DNA of 64,000 bases from Pavona decussata (lineage: Eukaryota). Below are positions 2,249 to 41,525 of the stretch, in pieces. The position numbers and the translations under genes are program-made. Within the stretch, counting starts at the first letter, position 1; each line of letters opens with the position of its first letter. The DNA is taken from assembly GCA_977016875.1 (NCBI GenBank), contig CDRNST010000011.1, positions 806,001 to 870,000 on the forward strand, read 5' to 3'. Under the pieces are notes generated by a model. That model saw nothing but the letters and a program-made list of their open reading frames with translations. It had not been told where the DNA came from and did no database searches.

Positions 2249-2343
2249 TTTACAAATCCGCGTTCTATAAGTCCTCGTTTTACAAGTCCTCGTTTTACAA
2301 ATCCAGTCCACTACAGTCCAGTCCACGAAATACAGTATTCCGT
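2249..2343. repeat. Transposon-like terminus with short tandem repeats (gttttacaagtcctc; ccagt)
   Basis: Repeated TTTTACAA(G/A)TCC and CCAGT units ending ...aaatacagtattccgt, exactly where the membrane-gene fragment is cut. Confidence 0.5.
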
Positions 2344-2624
2344 GTACTTTATCGTTTTTTTCAGGTGAGCATGCGTCGTTAACCCTTACTTGAAGACTGC
2401 AGGATGCTATATAGTTCAGGCTTGTGGCTTCTTTGTCATTGTATTCTTGGCAAATAAGCTGGTCAACAGGACGAAAATACCATTTTCGCCCCGTATTTTC
2501 CAGAGGATTGTAACCTAAAGACTGCAGTGAATTCGGGTTCTTCCAGGTTGCAATTCTCAGTCACTCCTCGTGTAAAACTGAACGCGATGTGACCAAACAC
2601 TTCTATCAGCGTCCTCCTAGCCAT
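2341..2624 (-). pseudogene. Membrane-protein family copy 1 (5' fragment, frameshifted)
   Basis: Manual translation: MARRTLIEVFGHIAFSFTRGVTENCNLEEPEFTA, 2-nt deletion, then LGYNPLENTGRKWYFRPVDQLICQEYNDKEA...VRVNDACSPE. Upstream flank resembles that of copy 2. Confidence 0.9.
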
Positions 2625-4927
2625 TTAGACTAAAGTATTGGTATAACAAGTAATATTAATATCACTATCTTTGCTGGTTTAATGGAAAGTAACAGTAAGA
2701 AAGTTGATGAGAAATGTACAGAAAAATTATATAGACCAGTCAAAAGTTTATTTATGTTACTCTTGTTGCAACCAGAGGCCCCACATTTGATCAGAAAAAT
2801 ATTTGGCCAGATATTATCAGTGTACAGGTGTTGGATACTTCAGCAAGTGATCTGTACAAAAAGTGTTTGTCATTACAGACTAGATTCACCTCTAATCACT
2901 GTAATATGTGCCATGTTTGCTCCAATTTAAAAGGGCCCGCCAAAAAGCTTGGAGGAGCTAATTTTTGTCTTACCTTCGCAAGGCACAGAACATTTTGACT
3001 GCGTTTTCAAGGAAAAAGTGGTCTACCTATTTTATTTGTTTTAAAAATGGCGAGTTTTCATTGTGTTTTGAGACGATCTTCTGCTTTTGGTTACTGTCTC
3101 TTGCAGTCAGCTATGCGCATGTGCATGCTTTGGGTCTCAAAACACCTGACAAGACATTGAATATTTTTGTTGTAGTTTAATTATTTGGAAACAAGCTAGA
3201 ATTTTCTAAGTCTAAATAACTCTAATAATGAAAGATATCGTAACGATGTTATCTCGATCTATTTATCTGTGCGAATTTCAGATCAGGCTTATTTTTTGGA
3301 AACTCAACTAAAGTAAAATATCTAAATTCTCGAAGCCATTTTATATTCAAAGTTGTAGAGTAATATCACAAACTGAAATGTTGGCGATGATGGGCATTAA
3401 ACTGAACTAGAAACTGAAACCGTCAGATCAAGTGAGGTCGATTTGCACAAATGTTATTAAGATTTTTGGTTTATTTTTAAACAGGAAGCAACGCATAATT
3501 AACCCCAGTGTTCTTGTTTCTAATCCGCCATCGACTTTACTTATTAGTTCTTATTATAAAAAAATTGCAACAACTCAACCACGTTTATAGGGAAAAGGAA
3601 TCTGGGAAATGAAGTATTCACTACCATGGAGATCAGCAAACATTTTGATACTTACAAAGGTAGCTTTATTGCTGTCTTTAAGGATTATAGTTCACAGCAA
3701 AATTTTTCCCGATATCTGATTGGTTTTAAAAAATTGACAGCAGACGTGATAGTGTTCACTCGCAGAGGGACTTGAGCAGGCCACAGAAGTCCATCCAGGG
3801 AAAGATCCCAGATTGGCAGTTCTTCTCAGGAAAAAAAGAGCTGCCTTTAATTTTTCTAATTCATTAGCAAACAGATTGCTTGCATTAAGGGTCAAATTTA
3901 TAAACTAAAAATTTTCACTTTCATTGACTTTTGTTCGGAAGAAAATTAATCTGAACAATAAAGACAATAGAATGTTTCTGTCTCGGCCCATTAGAAAGTT
4001 GACGTTTTAAACCTAGCGTCTTAGGGCTAGTATTTTTTTATTATTACTATTATTATTATTTTTTTTTTATCTTTTTTTGAGGGGCAACTATTGGCCAATG
4101 TTTTCTCGACAGAAAACTCCATTGTTTCGATAGTTGAGAGAATGTCATTAAATTTGCGTACTTTCAATAATTCATGCGTGCTGCTAATAAACCATCGGGA
4201 GCGTCTACTAATTCTAGCTCATTTATTCTTTTGACAATAATAATATAAAGAATATAATCTTTTTTATGTTATTCAGTTATTCAGAATACTCGAGTATGTT
4301 TCTAAATAAAGCACAACCAAAACAATTTAATTTTGTTTTGTACTCATCGATGGCCGTTCAAGATGCTGCATCTTTGCTTTCAGCCCTTTTTCCGAATGTA
4401 AATTTGACTCACTGCCTTGTTTAACACATTATTTTAAACTATTCCATATAATAAGTCTGCATCATTATTCTAAACGTCTTTATCCACAAGGACTTCAAAC
4501 TATTCTTCTCTATTGTGTAAACTGGTTATAGTTTGCTTAAATTTAATATCGACCGGAAAGGATGAATTTAAATGGTATTTCAAAAATTATATGCACATTA
4601 GATTACCCAGTGTACCTTAGTGGATTTTTTTCCAATCCATGATACCAACACACTTCTACAGACTAGGACACCGCGCCCGAACTCTTTTAGACCTGGCCTG
4701 GGGCCTGTTAACAAAGAGAGATCCAGCTTGCTGCCTACAAAGTAGCAATCAATAAAACTACTAATCGAGTCTCTCTGCTAAATTGGGACTCTCATGGAAT
4801 AAAGACGGTATGGAATAGCGATAAAGAAATAGAAGAAATCTGAACAATTTACGTTCTTCCTTCAGCGTTTCTTGTGTATTGCTGCTACACCTCGCTTTTG
4901 TCAACAAAAAGGCATTTTGTAAGATTT

Positions 4928-6523
4928 TTACGATTCATGAAAGCGCGCATGTACTATAATTAACAAGTGAACACTAGTCCATATAGCTATTGGCACCGCA
5001 TTTACAATTGCCACGGAAATGTGCCTCTTCCATCGTCTTCGCCAGACAGCCATCACGGCCATATTCTGGTAACGAGTTTCGATAGCTAGAGACACACTGG
5101 TGAAAAACCACTCAATCACCAACTGAACTGAGGTATGAGTAGCAAAGGATTCTAGTAAATCGGAGAGGGACTTGTTTTGTAGATAAACAAACTGATACAA
5201 ATATAAGAAGCCGTTAACAGCCACTATAGCAGTTGATTCACACCACATGCTCATGATGGTGATATCAGCCATTAGTCTCTCACGGCGAGGAGTGCGAAAA
5301 CTTCCCCAAGGAGCTGATCGTCTTTTCCACAGCGTGTGACAAATGTGATCAACCAAAACCATGGTACTTCGTTCTATGACTTCTGCAGCACCGTGAATTA
5401 TTCCAATAACCGCAATCGATTGCAAACGGCTAAGATCCGCTTGTAAAACTCGAAACGAAACCGCTAACCCAAAATACAGCGGCGCCAACAAAACATACGA
5501 AAATGCTGGATGGGTGAGGTTATGCATCCGTTGAACACAAATTCGTGAGATTACCTTAACAACGACTCCAATGAGAGGAGAAAAGAGTGCGATTAACAGT
5601 TTGCCTTCTTTGTTTTGGCTGTTATACGCTGGGTAAATTAAGGAGGCTGCAATAATGGAAATAAAGAAAGAAAAGCAACCGGGTACAATAAGTTGGAAGG
5701 ACAAAGTCAGCTTCTCTCTCCTTGACCGCGTACACACGTGATTCGTTACCAGACAGATTTGTAAACAAACACTTATCAGAAATATAACGTTGAGTGGAAT
5801 CTTTAGCGGTATTGAAATGAAGGAGTGAGATTTTTCTAAGGCTTGTAAAGTAACACGGTAAAGTGCATCGAGGCAATAAACAAGAATGGAAACTAGAACC
5901 AGTTTTCTCTTCACCCCCATTAACTGAAATGGACGGAAAAGGAAACAGAGATTTACAAAATACCACAAGTATATGAAGAAAGTAGAAATTACGCCACTTA
6001 TAGTTCTCATCCATTGCACCTGTACTGGAATCAAGTTTGCGGTCTGAAATTGACAGTTGAGTAAAGTTTTGTAGCATAAGTAAGAGATCAGGATGTATAA
6101 CAAACCAATGATAGTAGCGGTTAGAAGAGAAATCGATCCTCCAATGCACATTGATTGAGAAAGTGTACGGAGAGCGGATGGTCTAAACCGCTTCCATGCC
6201 ATGGCTCCATCTTCATCTTCCTGATCGTTATCCATTGCTTCATTTTCATTTTCCTCCACTGTACATACGTCGATAACCCTTACATTAAGTCTGCTGGATC
6301 CAAGATAGTGGTCCGAGCTACTGGCTTCTCTGTCGCTGTATTCTTGGTAAATAAGCTCTTGAACAGGATGACAATACCACTCTCGTCCTGTGCTTTCAAG
6401 AGGACTGTATCCGAACGACTCCGCGGTGAATTCAGGTTCTTCCGGGTTGTAGTGCTCTGTTACTCCCCGGGTAAAACTGAACACGATGTGGCCAAAAAAC
6501 TCTATCAGTGTACTGCCACTCAT
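4928..6523 (-). CDS. Membrane-protein family copy 2 (531 aa, ~10-11 hydrophobic segments; C-terminal tail cut by TAA)
   Basis: Long intronless ORF aligned by eye over its full length with the ORFs at 22452, 33198 and 39915. Confidence 0.9.
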   Translation of the reverse strand: MSGSTLIEFFGHIVFSFTRGVTEHYNPEEPEFTAESFGYSPLESTGREWYCHPVQELIYQEYSDREASSSDHYLGSSRLNVRVIDVCTVEENENEAMDNDQEDEDGAMAWKRFRPSALRTLSQSMCIGGSISLLTATIIGLLYILISYLCYKTLLNCQFQTANLIPVQVQWMRTISGVISTFFIYLWYFVNLCFLFRPFQLMGVKRKLVLVSILVYCLDALYRVTLQALEKSHSFISIPLKIPLNVIFLISVCLQICLVTNHVCTRSRREKLTLSFQLIVPGCFSFFISIIAASLIYPAYNSQNKEGKLLIALFSPLIGVVVKVISRICVQRMHNLTHPAFSYVLLAPLYFGLAVSFRVLQADLSRLQSIAVIGIIHGAAEVIERSTMVLVDHICHTLWKRRSAPWGSFRTPRRERLMADITIMSMWCESTAIVAVNGFLYLYQFVYLQNKSLSDLLESFATHTSVQLVIEWFFTSVSLAIETRYQNMAVMAVWRRRWKRHISVAIVNAVPIAIWTSVHLLIIVHARFHES

Positions 6524-7269
6524 TTTGATTACTGAATCAGTATAACAATTAATATTAATAACACTGTTTTAGTTGGTGCTCTTAAAGAAATTGGGGAATG
6601 ACAATTAAAATGAGTGATGGAAACTGAAATGTTCGCGTTGAGTGACATAGCATATTACCACCGAAACTGTCAATTAGTGTTATGTAATGAGAATTGAAAG
6701 ATATCAGTCTAAAGGAAAGGCATTAACAAATGACACTGAAACCTGAGATCAGAAGAAACTGATATTCAGGCGATGACCGACATGATAATTATATTCCAGT
6801 CGGAAACCGAAAACTGCTAATGAGCGCGTTTTTGACTGTCAAACCTTAAATCGATTCCACAATAATCGATTAATCGTGACTAGTTGTGAATCTTGCCAAG
6901 GAATTACAGTCAATCCACGTCACGCGTGACCAGTATTTCCGAGAATGAAATAAAAATAAATTCCTATTTGTAATGTCCGGCATTTGAATGGAATGTTGAT
7001 CTGAACATTTCCCTGAAAATCGTTCTGAAAAAGACGGATTAACTGAAAAAAAAAAGTCTCAAAATACTTGAGAAACAATATGTTATTCTTGGAATACTTA
7101 ATGCTGCAATGTAAAGAAAAATTCGTAACTTTAAACCGTCAATAAAACTAGGGAAATCTTTACGGGAACTCTGAAATCTCGTTGGCGAGGTTCAAACTGA
7201 CATGACTCCGTTGAAATTAAAAAAAAACGGTCCAGTGTGAAGTGGATTGACTGTAAAAACTAGGAGTGT

Positions 7270-7475
7270 AAACTAGGTTCATGGGACAAACATCCTGCAT
7301 ACTGCCAGGATTGGAACCTAGTTTAATGGCCTTACCTCCCACGAGTCTCCTGTAGGTTAGTGGTAGAGCATCCGAACTAGTAATTGGAAGGTCTTAGGTT
7401 CGACTCCTGATAGGAGCACTCGGAATTTTTTCCGAGTATGCCTGTGTCATTTACTAATTGATACATCATTCTCAA
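7270..7475 (+). mobile_element. tRNA-like (Pol III) repeat with an inverted 5' segment
   Basis: A-box-like tagGTTAGTGG, B-box GGTTCGACTCC, then ctcggaa-TTTTT-tccgag hairpin. Homologous to 42757-43063 and 54560-55190. Confidence 0.75.
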
Positions 7476-9016: not shown

Positions 9017-10372
9017 TCAAGAAAAAGGCATTTTGCAAGACTGGCTTTCCGATTGATTAACGCGCCCATGTACTACAACTAGCAAGGTAACACACATAGC
9101 TATTGGCACCACATTTACTATCGCCACAAATATATGACTCTTCCATCGTCTTCGCCAGACAGCCATCACGACCATATTCTGGTAACGAGTTTCGATCGCT
9201 AGAGATACGCTGGTGAAAAACCATTCAATCACCAACTGAACAGAGGTATAAACAGCAAATGGTTCAAGTTAATTAAAAAAGGACTTGTTTGTTTTGTAGA
9301 TAAACAAACTGAAACAAGTATAAGTAACCGTTAACAGCTACAATTGCAGTTGATTCAGACAACATGCTCATGATGGCGATATCGGCCATTAGTCTCTCAC
9401 GGCGAGGAGTACGAAAACTTCCCCAAGGAGCTGATTGTTTTTTCCATAGTGACAAATATGATCACTCAAAACCACGCTGCTTCGTTCTATGACTTCTGCA
9501 GCGCCGTGAATTATTCCAATAATAGCAAACCATTTCAAACGGTCAAGATCTGCTTGTAAAACTCTAAACAAAACCGCTGAGCCAAAATACAGTGGTGCCA
9601 ACAAGACATGCGAATATGCTGGATGGGTGGCGTTATGCATCCGTTGAACGCAAACTCGGGAGATTACTTTAAGAACGACTCCAGTGAGAGGAGAAAAGAG
9701 TGCAATTAACAGTTTACCTTCTTTGTTTTGGTTGTTATACGCTGGATAAATTAATGAGGTTATAGTAATGGTAATAAAGAAAAAACCAGCCGGGTACTAA
9801 AAGTTGGAAGGAAAAAGTCAGCTTCTCTCTTCGTGACCGTGTGCACAGGTGATTCGTTACAAGATAGACTTGCAATCATACGCTGGTCAGAAACAGAAGG
9901 TTGAGTGGAATCTTTTGTGAGACTGAAATGGCGGAATGAGATACCAGTAGAGCTTGTAGAGAAACACGGTATACGGCATCGAGGCAATAAACAAGAATGG
10001 AAACTAGAACCAGTTTTCTCCTCACCCCCATTAATTGAAATGGCAAAAAAGGAAAAGCAGATTTGCAATCTAGTCTACCAAACAGATAAGGAGAAAAATA
10101 GATATAACACTATTTTGAATGGTCATCATCCATTGCACTTGTAGTGGGATTGATTCAGCGGTGTGAAATTGACAATTGAGTTCCGTAAGTTATAAGTAAC
10201 ATGTCAGCATGTATACTGTACCAATGGTAGTAGCGGTTAGAAGTGGAATCAAATCTCCAATGTACATTGTTTTATAAACAGTATGAGGAATTGATGGCCT
10301 GGATGGCTTCCAAGTCTTTGCTCTATTTTTAATTTACTGATCTTCCTGTGTTTCCTTTTCCTTTCCCTGTGC
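9017..10372 (-). pseudogene. Membrane-protein family copy 3 (frameshifted, 5' domain lost)
   Basis: ORF pieces 9017-9235, 9273-9455 and 9389-9640 match the paralogs in different frames. The 3' flank 8740-9016 is homologous to the copy-2 flank 4600-4900. Confidence 0.9.
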
Positions 10373-12359
10373 AATCTGAAAGGTAATCAATTTTTGATCG
10401 TAGACGATGTCAGAAGAAAGTTCCTAATGGAAGCGATCAGCGGCACAGCACGTTGCAAGTAATATACCCAAATTGAAGAGTAGCCCGAGAGGGTGGGGAG
10501 AGTTAACCCCTGACAAGACTTATACCATTGCCAAACATCGACGTGAACGAGCGGTAAGAAATGTTTCCATTTTTTTATTTAAGCTAATAGGTGCAGCCAA
10601 AACAAACCTACTGAAATAGTAAACTTATTTTAATTTATAATTGGTCTAGACTCACAAGAATGCGAAGAGGCGAATGGAGTCTCTTACTTCTGAGACTGCT
10701 GTCTGTTGGCGAGCGGATGAAGGGCCGCAGTGACATGATAAAGCTAGTTCTTTTTCTTTCTCAATTCCACGTGTATAAATTTGGGAGTAGGCTTTCCAAG
10801 AAGAACAGATCATTCTTTTTAAAAAAGCTTCAGCCTTGAATTTGTCTGTGAAGAACGACGTAAAGAGTCAATCGAACATCTCGGTCGATTGACATACTGC
10901 TCAAAATACTGCTCAAAAGGTCGGCTTTTCTTACCTGGAAATCGAGATATTTTGAAAAATAACACACGCAACAGCTTTTCAAATGTTGTGCGGTTTTGCT
11001 TCTCTTACTACCAGACCAATTTCATCTAAAAGACAAAATGAACAAGCTTATATTCACGCCACGAAAAATGTCTCCTCAGCGGTCCGCATGTTGCTGCGAA
11101 GTAAAATTTGATGTGGTGGTTTCGTTGACAAAAGGCAAGCTTCTTGTTCATAGGAAAAGTCTTGCTTATTTACACTTCCCTTGGGCCCCAGTAAAATATT
11201 CTTTAAAACCGAAAGATTTCAAATATTTAGAAAATAGCAAGCTCCCCCAACACAAACCTCAGAGCGGAGCGAAGCGAGGCGATGCAAAGGGTCATGCAAA
11301 AACGAAGCCGTAACTAAACAAACTTAAGCCCTCAATTTCACGCATTGCATAGCTCTCGAAGAAATCTACAGTGCTAGAGAAAGGATCAAAAAACAAATAG
11401 CAACGATTCGAGACACAACATCTTGCCACAAAAACAAATGGCCGGGCCCCGCAATACAAAAACTGTAAGATAAACAACTGATGTAATTACACAGTTGAAT
11501 CCTAACAAAGATAACAACAATAGCGGTCGCTTTCGGAGGTTAAAGATTATCACACGGTTCAATCCTAACTAGAAGCTGTACTGTCACCGGACCGCGAACT
11601 GAAACGAGCCAAACTAGATCTTAATACTTAGTAAAATGAAATGGCATAAGAACGACAGCGGCTAAACAGAAACAACAAGAGGTGAAATAAACAGGCGCTA
11701 AACGCAGAACTCTAAACCCAAAATGTCCTTTGAGATCAAAATACAAAACATGCTACAGTTAAGCACATGGTTTTGTTCTATGATTATCGTACAAATCCTT
11801 CAAATCGTCATGCCAACCCGCTGTAAACATACAAGAAGCTAAATTGATCAAAAGACTGAGATAGAAGCGCTAAACATGCAAGTAGGAGTTGTGTAGGCCT
11901 TTCATTCCTATTTTACGTGCTTGATCGTCGCGTCAATCACGTAGCCAGAGTTGTAGTAAAATTCTGAATCATCTGAGTTGTACCTTTGCTCGGATTCGGT
12001 ATCAGTGTTCGGCTTTTGGGCAAAAAAATCGGCCAGAAAAACCCAAACAGCTCGCGTAGAATTCACTCCGACTCACTACTGTTTTGTTGTGTGCTTGTTA
12101 TCGAGATACCGGGTCGACGTCACAACTCACTAGTGCCAGTCCTCTAATGGCGCGGTTTTAACTTCGGAAATTGTGATTTCGATCGCGTTTTAAAAATCGA
12201 GAATAACTTCAAATCTCATTATTTTGCTTGTTTTGGCTTACTTTCTACGTCTACTTTTGAGAATGAAAGGAATTGGGTAGGGGTGATAGGCACTTTAAAA
12301 TAGGCAATAACAATTCAGCCAGTAAGATTCGCGTATTCTGACGAAATATCTAATATTAT

Positions 12360-15558: not shown

Positions 15559-15791
15559 NNNNNNNNNNNNNNNNNNNNNNNNNNNNNNNNNNNNNNNNNN
15601 NNNNNNNNNNNNNNNNNNNNNNNNNNNNNNNNNNNNNNNNNNNNNNNNNNNNNNNNNNNNNNNNNNNNNNNNNNNNNNNNNNNNNNNNNNNNNNNNNNNN
15701 NNNNNNNNNNNNNNNNNNNNNNNNNNNNNNNNNNNNNNNNNNNNNNNNNNNNNNNNNNNNNNNNNNNNNNNNNNNNNNNNNNNNNNNNNNN
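15559..15791. other. Assembly gap (N run)
   Basis: 233 N bases. Confidence 1.
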
Positions 15792-17154
15792 AGGTTCTAA
15801 TAGTCTTCATGTTGGAGTTATCGATGCGTGTGCACCAGAGGAAAACGAAGAAAGACAAGGAGATCAGCGAGATGAAGACAAAGCCATGGCGTGGAAGCGA
15901 CAGAGACCGTCTGCTCTCTGCACAGTTTGTAAATCAATGTACGCTGGAGCTTTGATTTCACTACTAGCCGCGACAATGGTTGGTGCACTATACATGCTGG
16001 CTGTTTATCTCTCTTTTAGAACGGTGCAAAACTGTCAGTTTTACCCAAGGAACTCAATTTCAATTCAAACGCAGTGGATTAGATCCATGCCTGATGTGAT
16101 TTCTTGTGCTTTTCTTTATATTTGGTTCTTTGTACTCACACTATTTCTTTTTTCGCCCGTTTCAGCTGAAGGGAGTAAAAAAGAAACTGCTTCTTGTGTG
16201 CTTTGTTACATACACTTTGGATGCAATTTATCGTGTTGTTCTACAAGCAATCGGAATATCATATTCGAACATTGCTAATGTACAAAAGATTCCCCTCAAT
16301 ACTATTTTTCTTATAAACCAATGTCTGCAAATTTATCTCTTAACCAATCACTTCTGCTCACGTTCAAGGCAAAAGCTCACTTTGTTCTTCCAAACGGATA
16401 GTACCAGGTTGTTTCTGTTTCTTTACCTTCTTTATCGTAGCCTCACTGATCTATCCAGCATACAAACAATAAAATGCGACTGGAAAACTGTTAATTGGAC
16501 TGTTCGCTCCTCTTCTTGGAATCGTCCTCAAAGTAATATCGAGAATTTGCGCTCAGCGGTTTTATAACAATGTGTTGTTGTCGGCGTTGTATTTTGGCTC
16601 CGCGCTTATCTTTCGAGTTTTACAGGCGGATCTTGAGAATTTAGAATCCATCGCTATTCTTGGAATCATTCACGGCGCTGCAGAAGTCATAGAACGAAGC
16701 ACCATGGCTGTGATTAATCACATTTGTCATATGGTTTGGAAAAGAACATCAGCTCCTTGGGGAAGTTTTCGTACTCCTCGTCGTGAGAGACTAATGGCTG
16801 TTATCGCTATCATGGGCATGTTGTTTGTCTGTTAATGGGTACTTATACTTGTATCAATTTATTTTCTTGAAAAACAAGCCCCTCTTCGATTTATTTCGGT
16901 TATTTGCTATCCACACTTCAGTATCCCTTGTAACTGAGTGGGCCTTTACAAGTGGCTCTATAGCGAGAGCCACTCGTTATCAGAATATTGCTGTCCTTGC
17001 TGTTTGGCGAAGACGATGGAAAAGACATATTTTAGTGGCGATAGTTAATGCGGTGCCAGTGGCAATGTGGACTAGTACAAACCTCTTAGTCATTGTTCAT
17101 GAGCGCTTTCGTGAAGCATCCAATGTGCCCTGTTGTAAGATGCCGTTTACTTGA
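15792..17154 (+). pseudogene. Membrane-protein family copy 4 (multiple lesions; 5' end in the gap)
   Basis: Four overlapping ORF pieces. Frameshifts near 16150, 16395 and 16828, a stop near 16470, and deletion of the THPAYSY segment. Closest to copy 5. Confidence 0.92.
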
Positions 17155-20800: not shown

Positions 20801-20811
20801 CCCATGGACTA
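17811..20811 (-). mobile_element. Academ DNA transposon, internally deleted
   Basis: ~350-bp TIRs starting TAGTCC and ending GGACTA, with a 3-bp TSD CTA. Decayed transposase on minus: DLVAKEAHYHASC, MPKHLLLGMTLRHLTGS...NRFGHCASY, WDIFDLREE..GAGTIHTAHGIIIQ. Confidence 0.85.
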
Positions 20812-20814
20812 CTA

Positions 20815-22190
20815 TATCTGATCATAGCAAGATCGTCCGACTCCAACTCTCTTCGCTTGCTAGACCCCAATCCTTTCTTCTCTAACCACTGTATTGTCTC
20901 TACTGTATTGTCTCTTGTGATTTTAATATCAACAAGCCAACTCGCAATACTGAATTAGCTCATTTAGGTAGCTCGTCAGAGCCATTATGACGTCCTTTAA
21001 GAAAGACCCGTTTCAATCGTAGCTACTGACGCGTACTCCTGAAAACATCCATGACATTGTAAGCTCTTGTAACTCTAACATGTCTAAGATGCTTGACAAA
21101 CATGCTCTCTCGTTAGACAAGATCACTAACGACTCATCCATGTGTTCCATGGTTTACCGATAGCATTAAAGCTGAAAAGTGTCGCAATCAGTCTGCTGAA
21201 TGAACTTGGAGGTATTCTAAACCTCTTCCCGGATCCATTTATTCAAGGTCAGAAGGAATTATTTAAATTTTCTCAGATTTCTCATGAAGAAGTCCTTACA
21301 GGATTATAATCAACGTTTCATCACGGAAAACATCACCAATCAGCGGAAGTTGTTCACAGCTAGTAAAAATCTGTCAAAGATTGAGCACGTAGTGATTTTT
21401 CTCCCTTATTCTGACAACTATTACACTCGCGAATAACTTTGGAAATTATTTCTGCCACAAGAATTGTTGACATTAGATCTTTGGTTCATAATGAACTATA
21501 ATGATTTTACTTACTTACCATACGGCATCAAAATTACTTTGCTGCTATTTTGCTGCATGGTTTATCTAATGATATGCACTGTCGTATACATTTGAAAGTC
21601 TTTCTGAGAAAGAAAAGGAACCTGCCAGATTCTTTAAAAAGAGAAATCTTGCGTCTACGATCCTATCCCCATTTTACACTACTCTTCATTGACTGCCTCG
21701 ATGTCATGTTGCTGTGATGAAGAAAATAATACTTCTCTTTAATTTGGCTACTCTCCAAGGTAGCTGATATATCGGATTCCAACACAGCAATCTTGTAAAG
21801 CAGTTGTAATTAGTTTTAGTTTTTAACTTAACCTTAACTGATGATTTTCCGTGTTTAAATAAAGATTTACATACATACAATGAAAAGCATAATTAGTGAC
21901 TCCACTCCTTTAAAAGAAAACTAGATCGGACCGTTAGTAATCTCTAAAAAAATATATATCCAAGCTGACCGAGTATGCTGTCCGGCTAATCAACTTCAAA
22001 AACATATGTCCTTGCACCACCTTTTCCTTTTGCTTCAATATGCTCACCGGACAAATAATAGCACTGAAACTGCGTTGTTGAAAGTAAAACAAGACTTGAT
22101 GAACGTGAATAAACGCCATGTATCGCTCCTTGTTATTATAGATCTCGGCGCCACATGTGATACCGAGTAGACCACGAGATTCTGTCGTTT
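20815..22190 (+). mobile_element. Decayed L2/CR1-clade LINE ORF2 (interrupted by the Academ element)
   Basis: Endonuclease-end relic TL(Y)LIIAR...SNH spans the Academ site. RT motifs VSNL..ISKLTE, QYAHR..STETALLKV, LLVIIDLGATCDT.VDHEIL. Confidence 0.8.
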
Positions 22191-22451
22191 ATCTACCCTG
22201 TTCACAACAGGTTTCTATCAACTTATTCTTTTCGTAGAAGTTTTACATCTGGAGGGAATTATTTTAAAAATGGTCTGGGAATTATCTATCAACTGAAGGT
22301 CTATCAACACTTTTGGTTTCTGGAATATGATGTCAATCATTGGCAGAATTTCATTTTCGTCATCCTTATAAATATCTGAGCTTATAAAGCACTTCCTCTG
22401 AAAACTGAGAAACATACACTGTGATAGTGTAGCGCTGATTCACTGATCAAA

Positions 22452-24068
22452 ATGGCTGGCAGTACACTGATAGAGGTTTTCAGTCCTATAGTGTTCAGTT
22501 TTACAAGAGGCGTGACAGAGAATTGCAATCCAGAAGAACCTGAATTCACTGAAGAGTTTTTTGGTTACAATCCTCTTGAAAGCACAGGTCGAGAATGGTA
22601 TTATCATCCTGTAGATGAGCTTATTTACCAAGAATACAGCGACAGAGAAGCTGCAAGCTTGGACTATCTAGCATCTAGCTGTCTTAATATAAGAGTTATA
22701 AATGCATGCTCACCAGTTGAAAACAGGGAAGCACTGGACGATAAGCGAGGTGAGGATAATGTCATGGCTTGGAAGCGACATCGACCATCCGCAGTCCGCA
22801 CAGTATGTAAATCGATGTACACTGGAGCTTTGATTTCGATTGTAACTGCTATTCTAGTGGGTTTTTTATATATGCTAGTCTCCTATCTCTCCTATGAAAC
22901 TGTGCACAGTTGTCAGTTCCAGCCCGTTAACACAACTTCAGAACAAACGCAGTGGATAAGAACAATGTCCGGTGTTGCCACTTGTGCTTTACTCTACATC
23001 TGGTTCTTTGCACTTCTGTTCTTTCTCTTTCGCCCATTTCAGTTGAAGGGCGTAAAAGCAAAACTAATCCTGGCGTGTAGCATATTCTATTGCTTGGATT
23101 CACTTTATCGCGTTGCTCTACAGGCCCTTGGAATATCTCATTCCCACATTTCTTACTTGCAAAAGATTCCACTTAACGCTTTGTTTCTTGTTAATCAATG
23201 TCTGCAAGTGTATTTGATAACGAATCACTTGTGCACACGATCAAAACAGAAGCTGACTTTGTTCTTTCAAATGATAGTACCAGGTTGTTTCTGCTTTTTT
23301 ACTTTCTTCATCGTAGCCTCGTTAATTTATCCAGCGTATAACAAACAAGAAAACAAAGACGGCAAACTGTTAATAGCACTGTTCGCTCCCCTTATTGGAG
23401 TCGCATTAAAAGTTATTTCACGAATTTGCGTTCAGCGGTTATGGAACATAACCCATCCGGGATATTCCTATGTCTTATTATCGCCACTGTATTGTGGATC
23501 AGCGGTCGTATTTCGAGTTTTACAAGCGGATCTAGAAAGTTTGAAATCCATTGCTTTTCTTGGAATACTTCATGGCGCTGCAGAAGTCATAGAACGAAGC
23601 ACCATGGTTGTCATTGATCACATTTGTTATGCGTTGTGGAAACGAAAATCAGCTCCTTGGGGAAGTTTTCGTACTCCTCGCCGTGAGAGACTAATGGCTG
23701 ATATCGTCATCATGAGCATGTTGTTTGAATCAACTGCTATTGTGGCTGTTAATGGCTACTTGTATTTGTATCAATTTGTTTACTTGGAAAATAATTCACT
23801 CCTAGTGTTGCTGCAGTCTTTCTCCATTCATGTTTCAGTTCAACTGGGGATTGAGTGGTTTTTCACCAGCATATCTTTAGCAATCGTGACTCGTTACCAG
23901 AATATGGCAGTCATGGCTGTTTGGCGAAGACAATGGAAAAGACACATTTTAGTGGCAATTGTGAATGCGGTACCAATGGCCTTCTGGACTAGCACTAACC
24001 TGTTAGCTGTTGTACATGGGCGGCTCAGCGAAGCATCAAATAAACCCTGCAAGATGCCGTTTACATGA
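22452..24068 (+). CDS. Membrane-protein family copy 5 (538 aa, intact)
   Basis: Full ORF from aaaATGG to ...PCKMPFT*. Confidence 0.93.
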   Translation: MAGSTLIEVFSPIVFSFTRGVTENCNPEEPEFTEEFFGYNPLESTGREWYYHPVDELIYQEYSDREAASLDYLASSCLNIRVINACSPVENREALDDKRGEDNVMAWKRHRPSAVRTVCKSMYTGALISIVTAILVGFLYMLVSYLSYETVHSCQFQPVNTTSEQTQWIRTMSGVATCALLYIWFFALLFFLFRPFQLKGVKAKLILACSIFYCLDSLYRVALQALGISHSHISYLQKIPLNALFLVNQCLQVYLITNHLCTRSKQKLTLFFQMIVPGCFCFFTFFIVASLIYPAYNKQENKDGKLLIALFAPLIGVALKVISRICVQRLWNITHPGYSYVLLSPLYCGSAVVFRVLQADLESLKSIAFLGILHGAAEVIERSTMVVIDHICYALWKRKSAPWGSFRTPRRERLMADIVIMSMLFESTAIVAVNGYLYLYQFVYLENNSLLVLLQSFSIHVSVQLGIEWFFTSISLAIVTRYQNMAVMAVWRRQWKRHILVAIVNAVPMAFWTSTNLLAVVHGRLSEASNKPCKMPFT

Positions 24069-24224
24069 CAATTGTTAGACTGATAAGAATTATCGCTTTG
24101 TTTTAATTTCCAACAAAATAACAATCATAATTTGACTATCGAAAGCCAATTTTTTTGGTAATCTTTTTCTATCAGTTCAGATCATCACAACCGGGTGGAT
24201 GTTGAATAATAGTTGAATAAAAAG

Positions 24225-24703
24225 CTGCTTCCAGGAGAGGGCACCGACCCCCATTGCAAACTTACTCAAAGTAAAGGACACAAAATATAACTTAAGGGGC
24301 ACAAACATGCTCTCATTGCCCAAAGTAAGAAACACCAAGCATGGTCTTAGGTCTTTTCGGTACTTCGCTGCAAAGACATGGAATGCGCTGCCGGACTCGA
24401 TTCGCGCCATGGCCGAGCACAAAGGAATTTTTAAGAAGTATTCGTCATGCAGCATTTTAAAATTGTTATTATCGTGGTTAGCTTTTGAAATTGTAAATTT
24501 TAATTTGTACTCACACATGTATTGTTACATGAATGATTGGATTGCCTGGATATTTTAGATTTTTAAACTCTTAGATTTTAGATTGTTAGCTAATTTTCAT
24601 CTTTCTTTTTGTTTTTGTAATTTTATCTGTTTATTTGTGGGCTTCCTGTAAAGTAGCTTTTAGCTAAGTGGAGTGCCACGTAAAATAAAGTTCTTATGTT
24701 ATT
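24225..24703 (+). mobile_element. 3' end of a CR1/L2-group LINE
   Basis: YNLRG...LSLPKVRNTKHGLRSFRYFAAKTWNALPDSIR C-terminus, T-rich 3' UTR ending aataaagttcttatgttat. Confidence 0.75.
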
Positions 24704-26019
24704 TTTCACGGTTGACCGAAATCATACTTTCCATTTTAGTGGCGTCTGATTGTTCAATCAAGCGCCGTTAAAAACCGGTAGAAATCGCGATAAATCAGCT
24801 CATAAACGAAATGAATAACAAGAAATACACTCTACTTCCCAAAAGTCGAACAGAAACCAGACTTGACTCATATCTGTAATTTAAACTGTACTGGAAGAGA
24901 CTGAAATTATGCGTTCCTAGGTCCCATGCTTCTTGATCGTGACGTTTTTTATCAACAATAACGGTTTGGAACCAAACTTTGAGTGGATGATAGGCGAAAA
25001 CGTATCAAAAAGTATGCGTATTTAAACGCATTAGTGTGAATGGGGCCTTAATAACAATCATTTCATCTGCGACCAACAACTAAAAATGGGATTCTCCGGT
25101 AAGATTCAGGCAAACAAAAAGGTATTTTTTGGACTCTCACGAGAGATCTTCACACTGCAATGATTAGCGGGAAATGAGATCAACCGAATGGAGACCTTGT
25201 AAGACGAACGCTTTCTACTTGTTGACGTAACCAAATAACAGGACAACGCCACCATCAGGGGTTTCTGTGAGATTCTCACAAGAAAGTGAGGTCGAAGGTC
25301 CTCATAAGAGTGAGACCAACGTACATACTAGTTCGATACCGGCAATGGCCCTAAAAATTCATCGTGGGTAGAAGGGGCTATTCTGTTGTTGTTTATTACA
25401 GGAAACGTAGAAACGGAGAAAACTTCGACTTCTCTCCTTCTCGTCGAACTGCCTCCTCCCATTTAGTAAGTCCGACTTCCAATAGATTTCAGTTTAAACG
25501 TCATACAATATTCACCCGGGAATAAAGATAACAAACAGCTAACAGGTATGGTAACTTTTTACAAGGGAGAGTCACGAACCACTTCCAATTATTTTTCGAT
25601 GCGAGTATTTCATAATTATTCCTGCATTTCACTGAAACTGTTAAGGAATATCATAAGTAGTTGATTTATGATATTAAAGTAGTCGTCGCAGTTGTCCCAG
25701 ACATTTGCTCATTGGAAAAAACAAATTTCCAAATCAAAACAATATTAAAACTCAGGTCAGAGTGAATCAAAGATTAAATCAGTGCTAATAGCTCAATCAT
25801 CCACTGCAGAGGCACTTTGAAACTAATTTCCACCCTGCGTAAAAGTTAATACGATGAAATGATAGAAAGAGACACAAAGAAGAATCGCGCTTTATATCCT
25901 GATCACATATGACGTCCCAATTATCGATCTGCCAGAAACTGATCATCTCCCGACCTTTGAAACTCTCTCCTCCTCCTCAAAAAGTATCTGCATGGGAAGT
26001 TAAGCTATCTTCTTTAGAG

Positions 26020-28629: not shown

Positions 28630-30244
28630 ATGAGTAGCAGTACACTGATAGAAGTGTTTGGTCAAATCGTGTTTAGTTTCACACGAGGAGTGACAGAGCA
28701 CTACAATCCAGAAGAACCTGAATTCACTGCAGAGTCTTTTGGATACAATCCTCTAGAAACCACAGGTCGTGAATGGTATTGTCAACCTGTTGATGAGATG
28801 ATTTACCAAGAATACAGCGACAGAGAAGCCACACATTTTGACTATCTTGCGTCAAGGAATCTAGATGTAAGGGTTATAAACGCATGTTCCCCAGAGGAAA
28901 ATGAAGGCTCACACGAAGAAAAGCTCGATGAAGATAGATCCATGGCATGGAAGCGGCTACGACCATCTGTTCTCCACACAGTTTTTAAATCAATGTACAT
29001 TGGAGCTTTGATTTCGCTTGTTACTGCCACCATCATTGGTATAGTATACATGCTAGTCTCTTACGTATCCTATAAGTTTGGACTCGAATGTCAATTTCAT
29101 CCAAGGAAATTGATTCCAAAACAAGTGCAATGGATGAGATGTGTTACAGGCATGATTGCCGCTGCTTTCCTTTACATTTGGTATTTTGTACTTCTTCTAC
29201 TTTCTTTTCGTCCATTTCAATTAATAGGGGTTAAAAGAAAACTGATATTGACCTGCTTCTTTGTTTATTGTTTGGATTCACTGTATCGCGTTGCTCTTCA
29301 AACATTTGGTATATCTTACTCCGTCATCACAGGCTTCCTCAAGGTTCCACTCAACGCTCTCTTCGTTATCAGTATGTCTTGGCAAAGCTATATTGTAACG
29401 AATCACTTGTGCGTACGCTAAAGAAGACAAAAGCTGACGTTTGTCGTTAAATTGATTGTTACAGGTTGTGTTGTTTTCATCGTCTATATCGCCGTAGCTT
29501 TCCTTATTTATCCAGAGTATAACAATCAAACCAAAGAAGGCAAGCTGTTAATCGCACTCTTTGCTCCTCTCATTGGAGTCGTTGTCAAAGTAATCGCAAG
29601 AATTTGTATTCAGCGGTTACATAATGTCACCCATCCAGCATATTCGTATGTCTTGTTGTCGCCGCTGTATTTTGCTTCAGCAGTTATGTTTCGAGTTCTA
29701 CAAGCGGAACTTGACAGTTTGCAATCCATTGCTGTTCTTGGAATAATTCACGGCGCCGCAGGAAGTTTTAGAACGAAGTTCTATGGTTCTAATTGACCAT
29801 GTTTGTCACATGTTATGGAAAAGACGGTCAGCTCCTTGGGGAAGTTTTCGCACTCCTCGCCGTGAGAGACTAGTGGTTGATATTGCTATCATGAGCATGT
29901 TGTCTGAATCAACTGCTGTAGTGGCTGTCAACGAATTTTTATACTTGTTTCAGTTTGTTTACTTGCAAAACAAGTCCTTTTTCGCTTTACTTCAATCACT
30001 TGTCATCTATACCTCAGTTCAGTTGGTGATTGAGTGGTTTTTCACCAGTGTATCTCTAGCGATTGAGACTCGTTACCAGAACATGGCTGTGATGGCTGTT
30101 TGGCGAAGACGATGGAAGAGGCACACTTTAGTAGGCATCGTAAATGCCGTGCCATTGGCTTTGTGGACAAGCATTAATCTTTTAGTAATTGTACACGAAC
30201 GCTTTCCTGGATCAAACCGACCTTGTAAAATGCCGTTTTCTTAA
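28630..30244 (+). pseudogene. Membrane-protein family copy 6 (full length; one nonsense codon, one frameshift)
   Basis: TAA at 29419-29421 where paralogs have TCA. Extra G near 29761 (gcaGgaagt versus gcagaagtc). Otherwise colinear to PCKMPFS*. Confidence 0.9.
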
Positions 30245-33197: not shown

Positions 33198-34778
33198 ATG
33201 AGTAGCAGCACACTGATAGAGTTGCTCAGCCAAATAGCGTTCAGTTTTACACGAAGTGTAACAGAGCACTACAACCCAGAAGAACCTGAATTCACTGCAG
33301 AGTATTTTGGTTACAATCCTCTGGAAAGCACAGGTCGAGAATGGTATTATCATCCTATTGATGAACTTATTTACCAAGAATACAGCGACAGAGAGGCCAC
33401 ATGTTTGGACTATCTAACCTCTAGGCATCTTCATGTAAGGGTTATCGATGCCTGTACACCTGAGGAAAACGAAGGAACTTGGAAACGATTTAGACCGTCC
33501 GTCATTGGTACGGTACGGAAGTCGATGTACACAGGAACTCATATTTCACTTCTAACCGCTTGCTTTGTTGGTATAGTATACATAGTGACTTCTTTTCTCT
33601 GTTACAAAATTGAGCATAACTGTGAATTTCAACCAAAAGAGTTAATTCCAGTACAAGTGCAATGGACGCGAACAATTTCAAGTGTCATTTCCTGTGCCTT
33701 TCTTTACATGTGGTACTTTGCAAATGTGTTATTTCTTTTTCGCCCATTCCAGTTAACTGGGGTTAGAAGGCGACTTATCATTGTGTGTTTCCTGACATAC
33801 TCTTTGGACTCACTGTATCGCGTTGGCCTACAAACATTTGGCACATCTGCCTCCTTCATCTCAGGTTTCCAAAAGATTCCACTTAACGTTCTCTTTCTCA
33901 TCAGTGTATCTTGGCAAGTCTATTTTGTAACGAGTCACTTCTGCATACGGTCAGGAAGAAGAGAAAAGTTCATGTTTTTCTTGCAACTTATAGTTCCAGG
34001 GAGTGTTGTTTTCCTCATTTATATCACGGTAGCATCATTTATTTATCCGGAATATAACAATCAAAACAAGGAACGAAAACTGATAATAGCACTCTTTGCT
34101 CCTCTCATTGGAGTCGTTGTCAAAGTAATCTCAAGAATTTGTGTTCAGCGGTTATATAATGTCACCCATCCAGCATTTTCGTATGTCTTATTGATGCCAC
34201 TGTATTTTGGCTCAGCGGTCATGTTTCGAGTTTTACAAGCGGAACTTGACAGCTTGCAATCCATCGCTATTCTTGGAATAATTCATGGCGCTGCGGAAGT
34301 CATAGAACGAAGCACCATGGTTGTGATTGATCACATTTGTCACACGCTGTGGAAAAGACGATCAGCTCCTTGGGGAAGTTTTCGTACTTCTCGCCGTGAG
34401 AGACTAATGGCTGTTATTGCTATAATGAGCATGTTGTCTGAATCAACTGCAATTGTGGCTGTTAACGGTTTCCTGTACTTGTATCAGTTTGTTTACTTGC
34501 CAAACAAGTCCTTTTTCAATTTGCTACAGTCATTTGCAATTTATACCTCCGTTCAGCTGGTGATTGAGTGGCTTTTCGCTAGCGTATCTCTAGCCATCGA
34601 GACACGTTACCAGAACATGGCTGTCATGGCCGTTTGGCGAAGACGATGGAAAAGACATATTTTAGCTGCCATTGTGAATGCAGTACCATTGGCTACGTGG
34701 AATAGCACTAACCTATTAGTAATTGTACACGGACGCTTTCCTGAAGCCAACAAACCTTGTAAAATGCCGTTTTCGTGA
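33198..34778 (+). CDS. Membrane-protein family copy 7 (526 aa, intact, chimeric)
   Basis: Full ORF. The 5' part resembles copy 8 and the 3' part resembles copy 6. About 10 codons are deleted in the acidic linker. Confidence 0.93.
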   Translation: MSSSTLIELLSQIAFSFTRSVTEHYNPEEPEFTAEYFGYNPLESTGREWYYHPIDELIYQEYSDREATCLDYLTSRHLHVRVIDACTPEENEGTWKRFRPSVIGTVRKSMYTGTHISLLTACFVGIVYIVTSFLCYKIEHNCEFQPKELIPVQVQWTRTISSVISCAFLYMWYFANVLFLFRPFQLTGVRRRLIIVCFLTYSLDSLYRVGLQTFGTSASFISGFQKIPLNVLFLISVSWQVYFVTSHFCIRSGRREKFMFFLQLIVPGSVVFLIYITVASFIYPEYNNQNKERKLIIALFAPLIGVVVKVISRICVQRLYNVTHPAFSYVLLMPLYFGSAVMFRVLQAELDSLQSIAILGIIHGAAEVIERSTMVVIDHICHTLWKRRSAPWGSFRTSRRERLMAVIAIMSMLSESTAIVAVNGFLYLYQFVYLPNKSFFNLLQSFAIYTSVQLVIEWLFASVSLAIETRYQNMAVMAVWRRRWKRHILAAIVNAVPLATWNSTNLLVIVHGRFPEANKPCKMPFS

Positions 34779-39420: not shown

Positions 39421-39914
39421 AACTCTTGCTCCCCTTTCGGGAATAAGGCAACCTAATGTTCTCAATTGTTTGTTCCTTTCTACTCTTGGCTGGGAAGGCA
39501 GTATTGTATCCGGTTGGAATGAATGAATGAATGATAAAGACAAAGATTTAAACAGGATGTTAGCTGGTCATCAGCACATACAGATGAAGCAGAGTTAATT
39601 TAATACATACTTACTTTTGTCACACTGTAATATTTTATTTTACTCTAAGACACTAGCCCGTAGAACTACTTCAGATTCCAGTTTAAATAAAGAATTTTAG
39701 GACGATATGATGATGATGATGATTGATAAGATGAGGAAAACCTACACACAAAATAAAATGTCTTTGCTTGTACCAAGTTAATGTATGCGCACTACAAAAG
39801 CAATACCGAAAAAGCAATATTATGCTTCAGCGATATTTCCGGAGCAAGAACGGATAAAAGGTAAGTTTTTTTGGAGGCCAGGACTACAAAGCTGGAAGTG
39901 CCAGGTTCGTTCAA

Positions 39915-41525
39915 ATGAGTAGCAGTACACTGATAGAGGTGTTTGGTCACGTCGTGTTCAGTTTTACAAGAGGCGTGACAGAGCACTACAACCCAGAAGA
40001 ACCTGAATTCACTGCAGAGTCTTTTGGATACAATCCACTGAATAGCACAGGCCGAGAATGGTATTACCGTCCTGCTGATGAACTTATTTACCAAGAATAC
40101 AGCGACAGAGAGGCCACATGTTTGGACTATCTAACTTCTAGGCATCTTCATGTAAGGGTTATTGATGCGTGCACACTCGAGGAAAACGAAGAAACCCCGG
40201 ATGATCAGAAAGATGAAGATAGAGCCATGGCGTGGAAGCGATTTAGACCGTCCGCTATCCGAACAGTGTGTAAATCGTTGTACATGGGAGCTCTGATTTC
40301 ACTTCTAACCGCTTGCTTTGTTGGTACAGTATACATAGTGACTTCTTTCCTCTGTTACAAAATTGAGCATAACTGTGAATTTCAACCAAAAGAGTTAATT
40401 CCGTTACAAGTGCAATGGCTGAGAACAATTTCAAGTGTCATTTCCTGTGCCTTTCTTTACATTTGGTACTTTGCAAATATTTTATTTCTTTTTCGCCCAT
40501 TCCAGTTAACTGGGGTGAGAGGACGACTTCTTTTGCTGTGTTTCCTGACATACTGTTTGGACACTCTTTATCGTGTTTCTTTACAACTCCTTGGAATATC
40601 TCACTCCAAGATTTCTAATAAGGATCCACTCAATGCCCTTTTTCTAATAAGTGTGTGTTTGCAAGTCTACATTATCACGAATCACTTCTGCCCTCGGTCA
40701 ACAAAACAGAAGTTGACGCTGTTCTTCCAAATGATCGTACCAGGCTGTTTACCTCTCATTGTCGGTAGCTTAATAGCCGGAAATCTTTATCCTGTTTACA
40801 GCGAAGAAAATAAAGAAGGCAAACTACTAATCGCCATATTTTCTCCTCTCATTGCCGTCATCTTCAAAGCAATCACCCGAATTTGTGTTCAGCGGTTATA
40901 TAACATTACTCATCCAGCATATTCTTACGTTTTGTTGGCTCCACTGTATATCGGTTCAGCGGTTGTATTTAGGGTTTTACAAGCGGAACTTGACAGCTTA
41001 AGATCCATCGCTATTCTTGGAATAATTCACGGCGCTGCAGAAGTCGTAGAACGAAGCACAATGGTTTTGATTGATCACGCCTGTCACACTCTACGGAAAA
41101 GACGATCAGCTCCTTGGGGAAGTTTTCGTACTCCTCGCCGTGAGAGACTAATGGCTGATATCGCCATTATGAGCATGTTGTCTGAATCAACTGCAATTGT
41201 GGCTGTTAACGGTTACTTATACTTGTATCAACTTATTTACCTACAAAACAGTTCCCTTCAAACTTTAATACAGTCTTTTGCCGTCCATGTTTCAGTTCAG
41301 CTAGTCATTGAGTGGTTTTTCACAAGCCTTTCTCTAGGCATTGAGACTCACTTTCAGAATATGGCTGTCATGGCTGTTTGGCGAAGACAGTGGAAAAGAC
41401 ACATATTAGTTGCAGTTGTAAATGCAGTTCCATTAGCTATCTGGACTAGTAATACCCTGTTTGAAGTTGTCGGTGAACGCTTTCGTGAGTCCTTAAAGCA
41501 GACTTGCGAAATGCCCTTCACCTGA
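39915..41525 (+). CDS. Membrane-protein family copy 8 (536 aa, intact)
   Basis: Full ORF ending TCEMPFT*. Confidence 0.93.
   Translation: MSSSTLIEVFGHVVFSFTRGVTEHYNPEEPEFTAESFGYNPLNSTGREWYYRPADELIYQEYSDREATCLDYLTSRHLHVRVIDACTLEENEETPDDQKDEDRAMAWKRFRPSAIRTVCKSLYMGALISLLTACFVGTVYIVTSFLCYKIEHNCEFQPKELIPLQVQWLRTISSVISCAFLYIWYFANILFLFRPFQLTGVRGRLLLLCFLTYCLDTLYRVSLQLLGISHSKISNKDPLNALFLISVCLQVYIITNHFCPRSTKQKLTLFFQMIVPGCLPLIVGSLIAGNLYPVYSEENKEGKLLIAIFSPLIAVIFKAITRICVQRLYNITHPAYSYVLLAPLYIGSAVVFRVLQAELDSLRSIAILGIIHGAAEVVERSTMVLIDHACHTLRKRRSAPWGSFRTPRRERLMADIAIMSMLSESTAIVAVNGYLYLYQLIYLQNSSLQTLIQSFAVHVSVQLVIEWFFTSLSLGIETHFQNMAVMAVWRRQWKRHILVAVVNAVPLAIWTSNTLFEVVGERFRESLKQTCEMPFT

What the first reader, a model, noticed from the sequence alone, without database searches (positions are those of the whole stretch)
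2341..41525. Eight-copy birth-and-death cluster of an unassigned intronless ~11-TM protein: candidate receptor or transporter repertoire
Seen: 4 open and 4 broken paralogs in ~39 kb. Each has a highly conserved ~90-aa soluble N-terminal domain (FSFTRGVTEHYNPEEPEFTAE.FGYNPL..TGREWY), an acidic linker, ~10-11 hydrophobic segments, a conserved basic loop (SAPWGSFRTPRRERL) and a C(K/E)MPF(T/S) tail. Divergence concentrates in TM1-TM5 and their loops. Adjacent copies are each other's closest relatives (2/3, 4/5, 6/7/8). I see no GPCR, MFS, TRP or DEG/ENaC signature. Inference: a lineage-expanded family that diversifies a recognition module on a constant scaffold, as chemosensory, allorecognition or symbiosis receptor clusters do.
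Basis: partly seen in the sequence, partly recalled or inferred. Interest (0 to 1): 0.85.

Follow-up and report, generated by a model that had tools for sequence, protein, structure and literature searches.

The report
Coral-expanded orphan membrane protein gene cluster
This stretch of a stony-coral genome holds eight tandem copies (four of them broken) of a single-exon, roughly 11-helix membrane protein that is hugely multiplied in corals and sea anemones, has no known function, and most resembles, weakly, the TMEM16/TMC/OSCA family of ion channels and lipid scramblases.

Summary
Eight paralogs lie at 2348-41525. Four are open, though copy 2 has lost its conserved tail. Four are broken, and copy 4 starts directly at the assembly gap. 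The genome has at least 41 open copies in several arrays. The family occurs across Hexacorallia (Nematostella, Actinia, Montipora, Acropora, Oculina), always annotated "uncharacterized". Pfam gives no match.

TM1-TM5 do diverge faster (identity 0.44-0.60 against 0.71-0.80). But selection is purifying throughout (omega 0.08-0.49), and no codon is positively selected. Copy 7 is a recombinant of its neighbours. RNA-type runs cover copy 5.

My best reading is a birth-and-death family of channel- or scramblase-like proteins (about 45%). A receptor repertoire is not excluded, but the selection data give it no positive support. The scan's other notes on this window (copy 7 chimera, invariant nucleotide block) agree with what I found.

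The parts
2348..2624 (-). copy 1: fragment covering only aa 1-93, with one frameshift; the rest of the gene is absent
   Evidence: tblastn
4928..6523 (-). copy 2: open ORF of 531 aa. It ends at a premature TAA 9 codons early, and the conserved tail Cys is lost
9020..10375 (-). copy 3: old pseudogene covering aa 89-538, about 45-50% identity, 14 in-frame stops and frameshifts
15559..15791 (.). assembly gap (N) that abuts copy 4. Not filled; continuity across it is unknown
15793..17151 (+). copy 4: pseudogene covering aa 74-538, with frame changes near 16200, 16393 and 16825. Its N-terminus is in the gap or lost
22452..24068 (+). copy 5: open ORF of 538 aa, used as the reference. aa 1-102 is a conserved, low-confidence N-terminal region; aa 114-524 forms eleven helices
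22791..23345 (+). copy 5 variable half (TM1-TM5, aa 114-298): paralog identity 0.44-0.60, omega 0.33-0.49
23355..23897 (+). copy 5 constant half (TM6-TM10, aa 302-482): identity 0.71-0.86, omega 0.16-0.42. Holds the family-wide invariant H335, P336, R355, Q358, D389, R410, R413
24069..24700 (+). probable 3' untranslated region of copy 5. Contigs of RNA-type runs continue to about 24700 and then stop
28630..30244 (+). copy 6: young pseudogene with one nonsense codon (29419-29421) and one frameshift (about 29760)
33198..34778 (+). copy 7: open ORF of 526 aa. It is a mosaic: nt 100-650 resemble copy 8 and nt 750-1150 resemble copy 6
39915..41525 (+). copy 8: open ORF of 536 aa. It shares about 1.7 kb of upstream sequence with copy 7

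Best explanation
The window holds one tandem array of a Hexacorallia-wide, coral-amplified family of single-exon polytopic membrane proteins of about 500-540 aa. The array evolves by tandem duplication, unequal crossing-over or gene conversion, and pseudogenisation.

Each protein has these parts:
- A conserved, mostly unstructured acidic N-terminal region that is probably cytosolic. Its family-wide D-x-I-(F/Y)-x-E-(F/Y) motif is modelled docking as a beta-bridge onto the TM10-TM11 loop.
- Eleven long helices.
- A short tail, probably extracellular, whose Cys probably pairs with the conserved Cys of the TM1-TM2 loop.

The helical core is closest to the TMEM16/TMC/OSCA-TMEM63 channel/scramblase fold. 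I infer that the proteins conduct ions and/or lipids across a membrane. The constant TM6-TM10 half carries a conserved polar cluster, some of it on the cytosolic side (K320, R324, H335, D389, R410, R413, D417). That half would be the gating or binding core. The faster-evolving TM1-TM5 half would tune conduction, lipid contact or partner specificity.

Shown: the array, family size, taxonomic range, purifying selection, mosaicism, and presence in RNA-type runs.
Inferred: topology, fold assignment and transport function.
For: Array and pseudogenes.

Family size: the own genome has 83 matches, including at least 41 full-length open frames in arrays on several contigs. Public data hold more than 1100 cluster representatives.

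Range: Nematostella, Actinia, Actinostola, Montipora, Acropora, Desmophyllum and Oculina, all annotated 'uncharacterized'.

Models: pLDDT 78 / pTM 0.81 for copy 5, and pLDDT 85 / pTM 0.85 for the Nematostella relative at 26% identity.

No internal sequence repeat is detected (hhalign probability below 1%), as in TMEM16-type folds.

Topology: basic residues concentrate in the predicted inner loops. One Cys is conserved in the TM1-2 loop (31 of 32 sequences) and one in the tail (27 of 32). The tail carries an N-x-S/T sequon in 18 of 32.

Selection: dN/dS is 0.20-0.45, and 173 of 538 codons are under purifying selection.

Expression: contigs of small RNA-type runs tile 22456-24700 and leave the flanks nearly uncovered. 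A genuine coral metatranscriptome holds 96.6-98% identical contigs.
Against: - Foldseek gives no PDB match (E above 0.05, TM below 0.3).
- The ESM Atlas shape search returns only the family itself.
- Part of the ranking could come from unusually long helices.
- No Pfam anoctamin, TMC or RSN1_7TM signal appears in any of 47 members.
- The inferred N-in/C-out topology with 11 helices differs from TMEM16/TMC (10 helices, both ends in) and from OSCA (N-out/C-in).
- The homodimer prediction gave no verdict.
- The RNA nature of runs X1 and X5 is a guess by the tool.
Confidence: 0.45

Rival explanations
1. It is a sensory or recognition receptor repertoire (chemosensory, allorecognition or symbiont recognition). 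The variable TM1-TM5 half and its outer loops bind diverse ligands, and the constant half signals, possibly as a ligand-gated channel.
For: - Single-exon genes in tandem arrays with about a quarter to a half pseudogenes and recombinant copies, as in chemoreceptor families.
- Divergence is focused on TM1-TM5 and the TM1-2 and TM3-4 loops.
- Coral-amplified tandem families are mostly membrane receptors (PMC10236652).
Against: - No codon shows dN above dS (lowest p 0.08, uncorrected), and the maximum window omega is 0.49.
- The outer loops are very short (2-15 residues), leaving little ligand-binding surface.
- No receptor-type domain or 7TM signature is present.
- Cell-type expression is unknown.
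Confidence: 0.2
2. It is a solute transporter or other membrane protein with a fold of its own, unrelated to TMEM16/TMC/OSCA. It would be distantly related to the fission-yeast predicted transporter SPCC553.12c.
For: - 13-14% of the members of two cnidarian Atlas clusters carry Pfam 38.1 PF28488 (SPCC553_12c).
- PomBase-derived tables call that gene 'transmembrane transporter (predicted)'.
- Foldseek and the Atlas find no known fold.
- Conserved charged residues sit inside helices.
Against: - PF28488 is not in the local library, so the link could not be tested.
- The yeast protein is itself uncharacterised.
- No internal repeat typical of many secondary transporters is detected.
Confidence: 0.25
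3. It is an integral-membrane enzyme, for example a lipid- or glycan-modifying enzyme. Its catalytic site would be the conserved His, Asp and Arg residues of TM6-TM9 and the loops that join them.
For: H335, D389, R410 and R413 are invariant. K320, R324, H374, E381 and D417 are nearly invariant. These lie in TM6-TM9 and the loops joining them.
Against: - Dozens of paralogs per genome is unusual for such enzymes.
Confidence: 0.06
4. The copies are non-functional repeats, such as transposon cargo or decaying retrocopies, rather than host genes.
For: - The genes are single-exon and multicopy, and half are broken in this window.
- A DIRS/Ngaro-type retroelement lies nearby.
Against: - Strong purifying selection between paralogs.
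- Conserved length and motifs from anemones to corals.
- No transposon domain in or beside the ORFs.
- Flanks are unique for copy 5.
- Copy 5 is present in RNA libraries.
Confidence: 0.02

Closest known systems
TMEM16 (anoctamin) / TMC / OSCA-TMEM63 channel-scramblase (TCS) superfamily
   Same: - Polytopic eukaryotic membrane proteins with 10-11 long, tilted helices and no internal repeat.
- They are the only natural membrane proteins aligning over the whole core of both models, and they fill the top eight of about 1000 membrane chains.
- A conserved proline kink sits in the sixth helix (A309, P313).
- There is a conserved polar site in TM6-TM9.
   Different: - No sequence-profile similarity.
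- No large cytosolic domain.
- Inferred N-in/C-out topology with an eleventh helix.
- Basic rather than acidic conserved cluster, so no evident TMEM16-type Ca2+ site.
- Single-exon genes in large tandem arrays.
- Dimerisation is not shown.
Pfam 38.1 PF28488 (SPCC553_12c), named after an uncharacterised fission-yeast predicted transporter
   Same: A minority (13-14%) of members of two cnidarian clusters of this family are tagged with it in the ESM Atlas. Both are multi-pass membrane proteins of unknown function.
   Different: The model is absent from the local Pfam copy, so coverage, score and homology could not be checked. Most members are not tagged. Nothing functional is known about the yeast gene beyond screen hits.
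Tandemly duplicated, coral-amplified membrane receptor families (e.g. rhodopsin-like GPCRs) described by Noel et al. 2023 (PMC10236652)
   Same: Amplification by tandem duplication in coral genomes. Many single-exon membrane proteins evolving by birth and death, with pseudogenes.
   Different: Eleven helices rather than seven, no GPCR signature, and no identified ligand-binding domain. This family is not named in the passages of that paper that I read.

Membership tests
TMEM16/TMC/OSCA-TMEM63 (TCS) superfamily | Sequence-profile match to Anoctamin (PF04547), TMC (PF07810) or RSN1_7TM (PF02714) | tested here: not met
   No such hit at E up to 10 in any of 47 family members. The PDB sequence-profile search is empty.
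TMEM16/TMC/OSCA-TMEM63 (TCS) superfamily | Ten-helix core superposable on solved members | tested here: inconclusive
TMEM16/TMC/OSCA-TMEM63 (TCS) superfamily | Homodimer (TMEM16, TMC, OSCA; TMEM63 is monomeric) | tested here: inconclusive
   Complex prediction on two copies of aa 100-538 gave no verdict.
TMEM16/TMC/OSCA-TMEM63 (TCS) superfamily | Acidic Ca2+ site in TM6-TM8 (TMEM16 branch) or a membrane-exposed groove/pore lined by TM3-TM7 | not testable with these tools
   No residue-level structural alignment or coordinates are available. The conserved residues in the corresponding region are mostly basic or His.
Pfam PF28488 SPCC553_12c | Score above the family's gathering threshold | not testable with these tools
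   The family is not in the local Pfam library. The only evidence is indirect: Atlas tags on 13-14% of cluster members.
GPCR / 7TM chemoreceptors | Seven-helix core with a 7tm-type profile match | tested here: not met
MFS / repeat-built secondary transporters | Profile match, or an internal structural repeat of helix bundles | tested here: not met
   No Pfam hit. hhalign of the two halves gives probability 0.1%. Foldseek TM-scores to MFS chains are below 0.2.
Birth-and-death multigene family | Tandem arrays, pseudogenes, paralog clades interspersed among arrays, purifying selection on survivors | tested here: met

The most novel reading that the evidence does not exclude
These proteins are a fourth, previously unrecognised branch of the TMEM16/TMC/OSCA channel-scramblase superfamily. 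The branch arose in, or was retained by, hexacorals and multiplied into dozens of paralogs per coral genome. It would serve as a repertoire of sensory (mechano-, osmo- or chemo-gated) channels whose TM1-TM5 half sets stimulus or lipid specificity.
Probability: 0.2. Interest if true: 0.8.

Novelty: new variant of a known kind. Interest (0 to 1): 0.55.

Why it matters
Corals and anemones carry dozens of copies of this gene per genome, and public data hold more than a thousand variants. Yet every one is labelled 'uncharacterized' and none has a recognised domain.

If the weak but reproducible resemblance to TMEM16/TMC/OSCA is real, this would be a large unexplored set of channels or scramblases. 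The animals concerned depend on osmotic, calcium and membrane homeostasis for calcification and symbiosis. Nematostella offers a tractable model with at least three genes found here.

If the resemblance is not real, the family is a confidently modelled membrane fold with no solved relative. That also makes it a good target for structure determination.

Tried and rejected
- Pfam on four window copies, ten distant relatives and all 47 alignment members: nothing.
- PDB sequence-profile search: nothing.
- Foldseek against the PDB with both models: no match at E 0.001 or better.
- ESM Atlas shape search: only the family's own cluster.
- PF28488 could not be searched because it is absent from the local library.
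- Profile search with distant members returned only 15 hits because of the word filter.
- Homodimer prediction: no verdict, which is neither support nor evidence against.
- Literature searches for the Nematostella locus name, the yeast protein name and coral intronless membrane families found nothing on this family.
- Earlier scan notes, searched by words: nothing.
- A loose end at 22446 in one contig is not a splice acceptor, because no AG precedes it. So no 5' intron is claimed.
- Internal-repeat test: negative.
- Positive-selection scan: negative, but with limited power (24 paralogs, parsimony counting, recombination not modelled).
- The assembly gap was not filled.
Full report
**The observation.**
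ORF listing and translation show four long open frames that are plainly paralogous. tblastn with these finds eight loci and no more.
- c1, 2348-2624 (-): an N-terminal stub.
- c2, 4928-6523 (-): open.
- c3, 9020-10375 (-): heavily decayed.
- c4, 15793-17151 (+): three frame changes.
- c5, 22452-24068 (+): open.
- c6, 28630-30244 (+): one nonsense codon and one frameshift.
- c7, 33198-34778 (+): open.
- c8, 39915-41525 (+): open.

c2 is open but ends nine codons early, and its conserved tail cysteine is replaced.

The N run at 15559-15791 abuts c4. The first base after it is codon 74 of c4, and the missing 73 codons are not found to the left of the gap. Continuity across the gap therefore cannot be shown. 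I did not fill it. c4 is a pseudogene whatever the gap hides.

**Family size and range.**
The window is G000:C11:806001-870000 of a 602-Mb assembly. A six-frame search of that genome gives 83 matches. At least 41 are full-length frames without stops. They lie in arrays on C11 (two arrays), C171 (about 20 copies at about 50% identity), C78, C157, C214, C56 and C196. Four distant copies (30-35% identity) match only the helical core.

Public proteins include more than 1100 cluster representatives. Named ones come from Oculina, Montipora, Acropora, Desmophyllum, Nematostella, Actinia and Actinostola, and all are 'uncharacterized' or 'hypothetical'. The family is therefore at least Hexacorallia-wide and strongly amplified in stony corals. 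That fits the general picture of tandem amplification in coral genomes (PMC10236652).

**Sequence features.**
No Pfam family matches any of 47 members, and no PDB sequence matches the profile.

Alignments across subfamilies at 23-50% identity give these conserved features:
- A hydrophobic N-terminal helix.
- An acidic stretch.
- A D-x-I-(F/Y)-x-E-(F/Y) motif with an invariant Glu.
- W-(K/R)-x-x-R-P just before helix 1.
- One Cys in the loop after helix 1.
- H335-P336, R355, Q358, D389, R410, R413, D417, N484 and W491.
- A tail Cys followed by x-x-P-F.

**Structure.**
AlphaFold2 with a 47-sequence alignment gives pLDDT 78 and pTM 0.81 for copy 5. Residues 1-102 are mostly below 50, and eleven helices of 24-38 residues span 114-524. 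The Nematostella relative (26% identical) gives pLDDT 85 and pTM 0.85 with the same helix pattern. In both models the N-terminal motif forms a beta-bridge with the loop between helices 10 and 11. This would explain why the motif and N484/W491 are conserved together.

Searches for a known fold gave the following.
- Foldseek finds no PDB match.
- The ESM Atlas shape search returns only the family's own cluster.

The ranking is reproducible. The absolute scores are in the range the tool itself calls common for helical proteins, and long helices may contribute to the ranking. I therefore treat the TCS superfamily (PMC11534332) as the closest known fold, not as an established membership.

The two halves of the core show no sequence repeat.

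**Topology (inferred).**
Basic residues concentrate before helix 1 and in the loops after helices 2, 4, 6, 8 and 10. A single Cys is conserved in the helix 1-2 loop (31 of 32 sequences) and in the tail (27 of 32). The tail carries an N-x-S/T sequon in 18 of 32. This fits a cytosolic N-terminus, eleven helices and an extracellular or lumenal tail with a loop-tail disulfide. That topology differs from TMEM16/TMC and from OSCA.

**Evolution.**
A maximum-likelihood tree of 24 open paralogs from this genome shows the following.
- c8 is sister to a copy 100 kb upstream.
- c2 is sister to copies on C214 and C354.
- c7 falls in the c8 clade.
- c5 stands alone.

Within the window, the pseudogenes c3, c4 and c6 are nearest to c2, c5 and c7 respectively.

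c7 is a mosaic. Nucleotides 100-650 are 83-95% identical to c8, and nucleotides 750-1150 are 78-90% identical to c6. c7 and c8 also share upstream sequence.

Paralog identity is 0.44-0.60 in helices 1-5, against 0.71-0.80 in helices 6-10 and 0.75 in the N-terminal region.

Pairwise dN/dS is 0.20-0.45. Thirty-codon windows range from 0.08 to 0.49, highest in helices 1-5. A parsimony counting test finds 173 of 538 codons under purifying selection and none with significant dN above dS.

So the variable half is relaxed, not shown to be diversifying. The power of this test is limited and recombination was not modelled.

**Expression.**
Several small runs flagged as probable RNA hold 64-71% of the words of copy 5. 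At about 130 million letters they are far too small to assemble a 600-Mb genome. Laid on 20500-26000, their contigs tile 22456-24700 at 99% identity and leave the flanks nearly uncovered. A true coral metatranscriptome has a 970-nt contig at 96.6% identity and a 222-nt contig at 98%. This supports transcription of copy 5 or its allele or orthologue. These are contigs, so strand and transcript ends are not shown.

**Verdict.**
The family is a genuine, constrained, expressed host gene family.

The only exception is an untestable hint: Pfam 38.1 PF28488, named after an uncharacterised fission-yeast predicted transporter, tags a minority of members.

My odds for function are:
- Channel- or scramblase-like protein with a TMEM16/OSCA/TMC-like core: about 45%.
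- Transporter with its own fold: about 25%.
- Receptor repertoire: about 20%.
- Membrane enzyme: about 6%.
- Non-functional repeat: about 2%.

The homodimer prediction gave no verdict and counts for nothing.

Noticed in passing
window 33198-34778 (with 28630-30244 and 39915-41525): Copy 7 is a recombinant. Its 5' third matches copy 8 at 83-95% identity, and its middle matches pseudogene copy 6 at 78-90%. This agrees with the scan note s1-489006.
   Followed up: partly
window 23538-23759 (aa 363-436 of copy 5): Synonymous divergence between paralogs drops to 0.18-0.22 here, against 0.30-0.47 in much of the rest of the gene. This suggests gene conversion or a nucleotide-level constraint in the constant half. 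It overlaps scan note s1-489187.
   Followed up: partly
window 22747-23837: One contig of run X5 joins 22747 to 23837, skipping 1089 nt. The skip is in frame, has GT..AG ends, and would remove helices 1-9. It could be an intra-ORF splice or an assembly chimera between conserved blocks.
   Followed up: no
window 4928-4960: Copy 2 carries a premature TAA and a Cys-to-Tyr change in the otherwise near-invariant tail, while its sisters on C214 and C354 keep the tail. It may be a very young pseudogene.
   Followed up: partly
window 46004-49933: A GC-rich (0.52-0.54) retroelement with reverse transcriptase and a tyrosine recombinase (Phage_integrase), i.e. DIRS/Ngaro type.
   Followed up: partly
window 59499-61277: A single-exon ORF of 592 aa with an N-terminal F-box and a weak pentapeptide-repeat hit.
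   Followed up: no
window 1142-1684 (-): An ORF of 180 aa that matches the N-lobe of a protein kinase domain, probably an exon of a neighbouring gene.
   Followed up: no
window 17811-18151 and 20457-20811: An inverted pair of a 355-bp repeat (88% identity) lies between copies 4 and 5. One definite RNA run has contigs ending at 20811.
   Followed up: no
window 42755-43063, 7269-7475, 54557-55198: A short dispersed repeat with a 47-bp exact internal duplication. It coincides with the tRNA-like unit of scan note s1-489188.
   Followed up: no
G000:C214:29553-31172 and G000:C354:26776-28395: Two copies on different contigs differ by dS 0.025 and share the same upstream ORF extension. They may be haplotigs, which would slightly inflate the copy count.
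   Followed up: no
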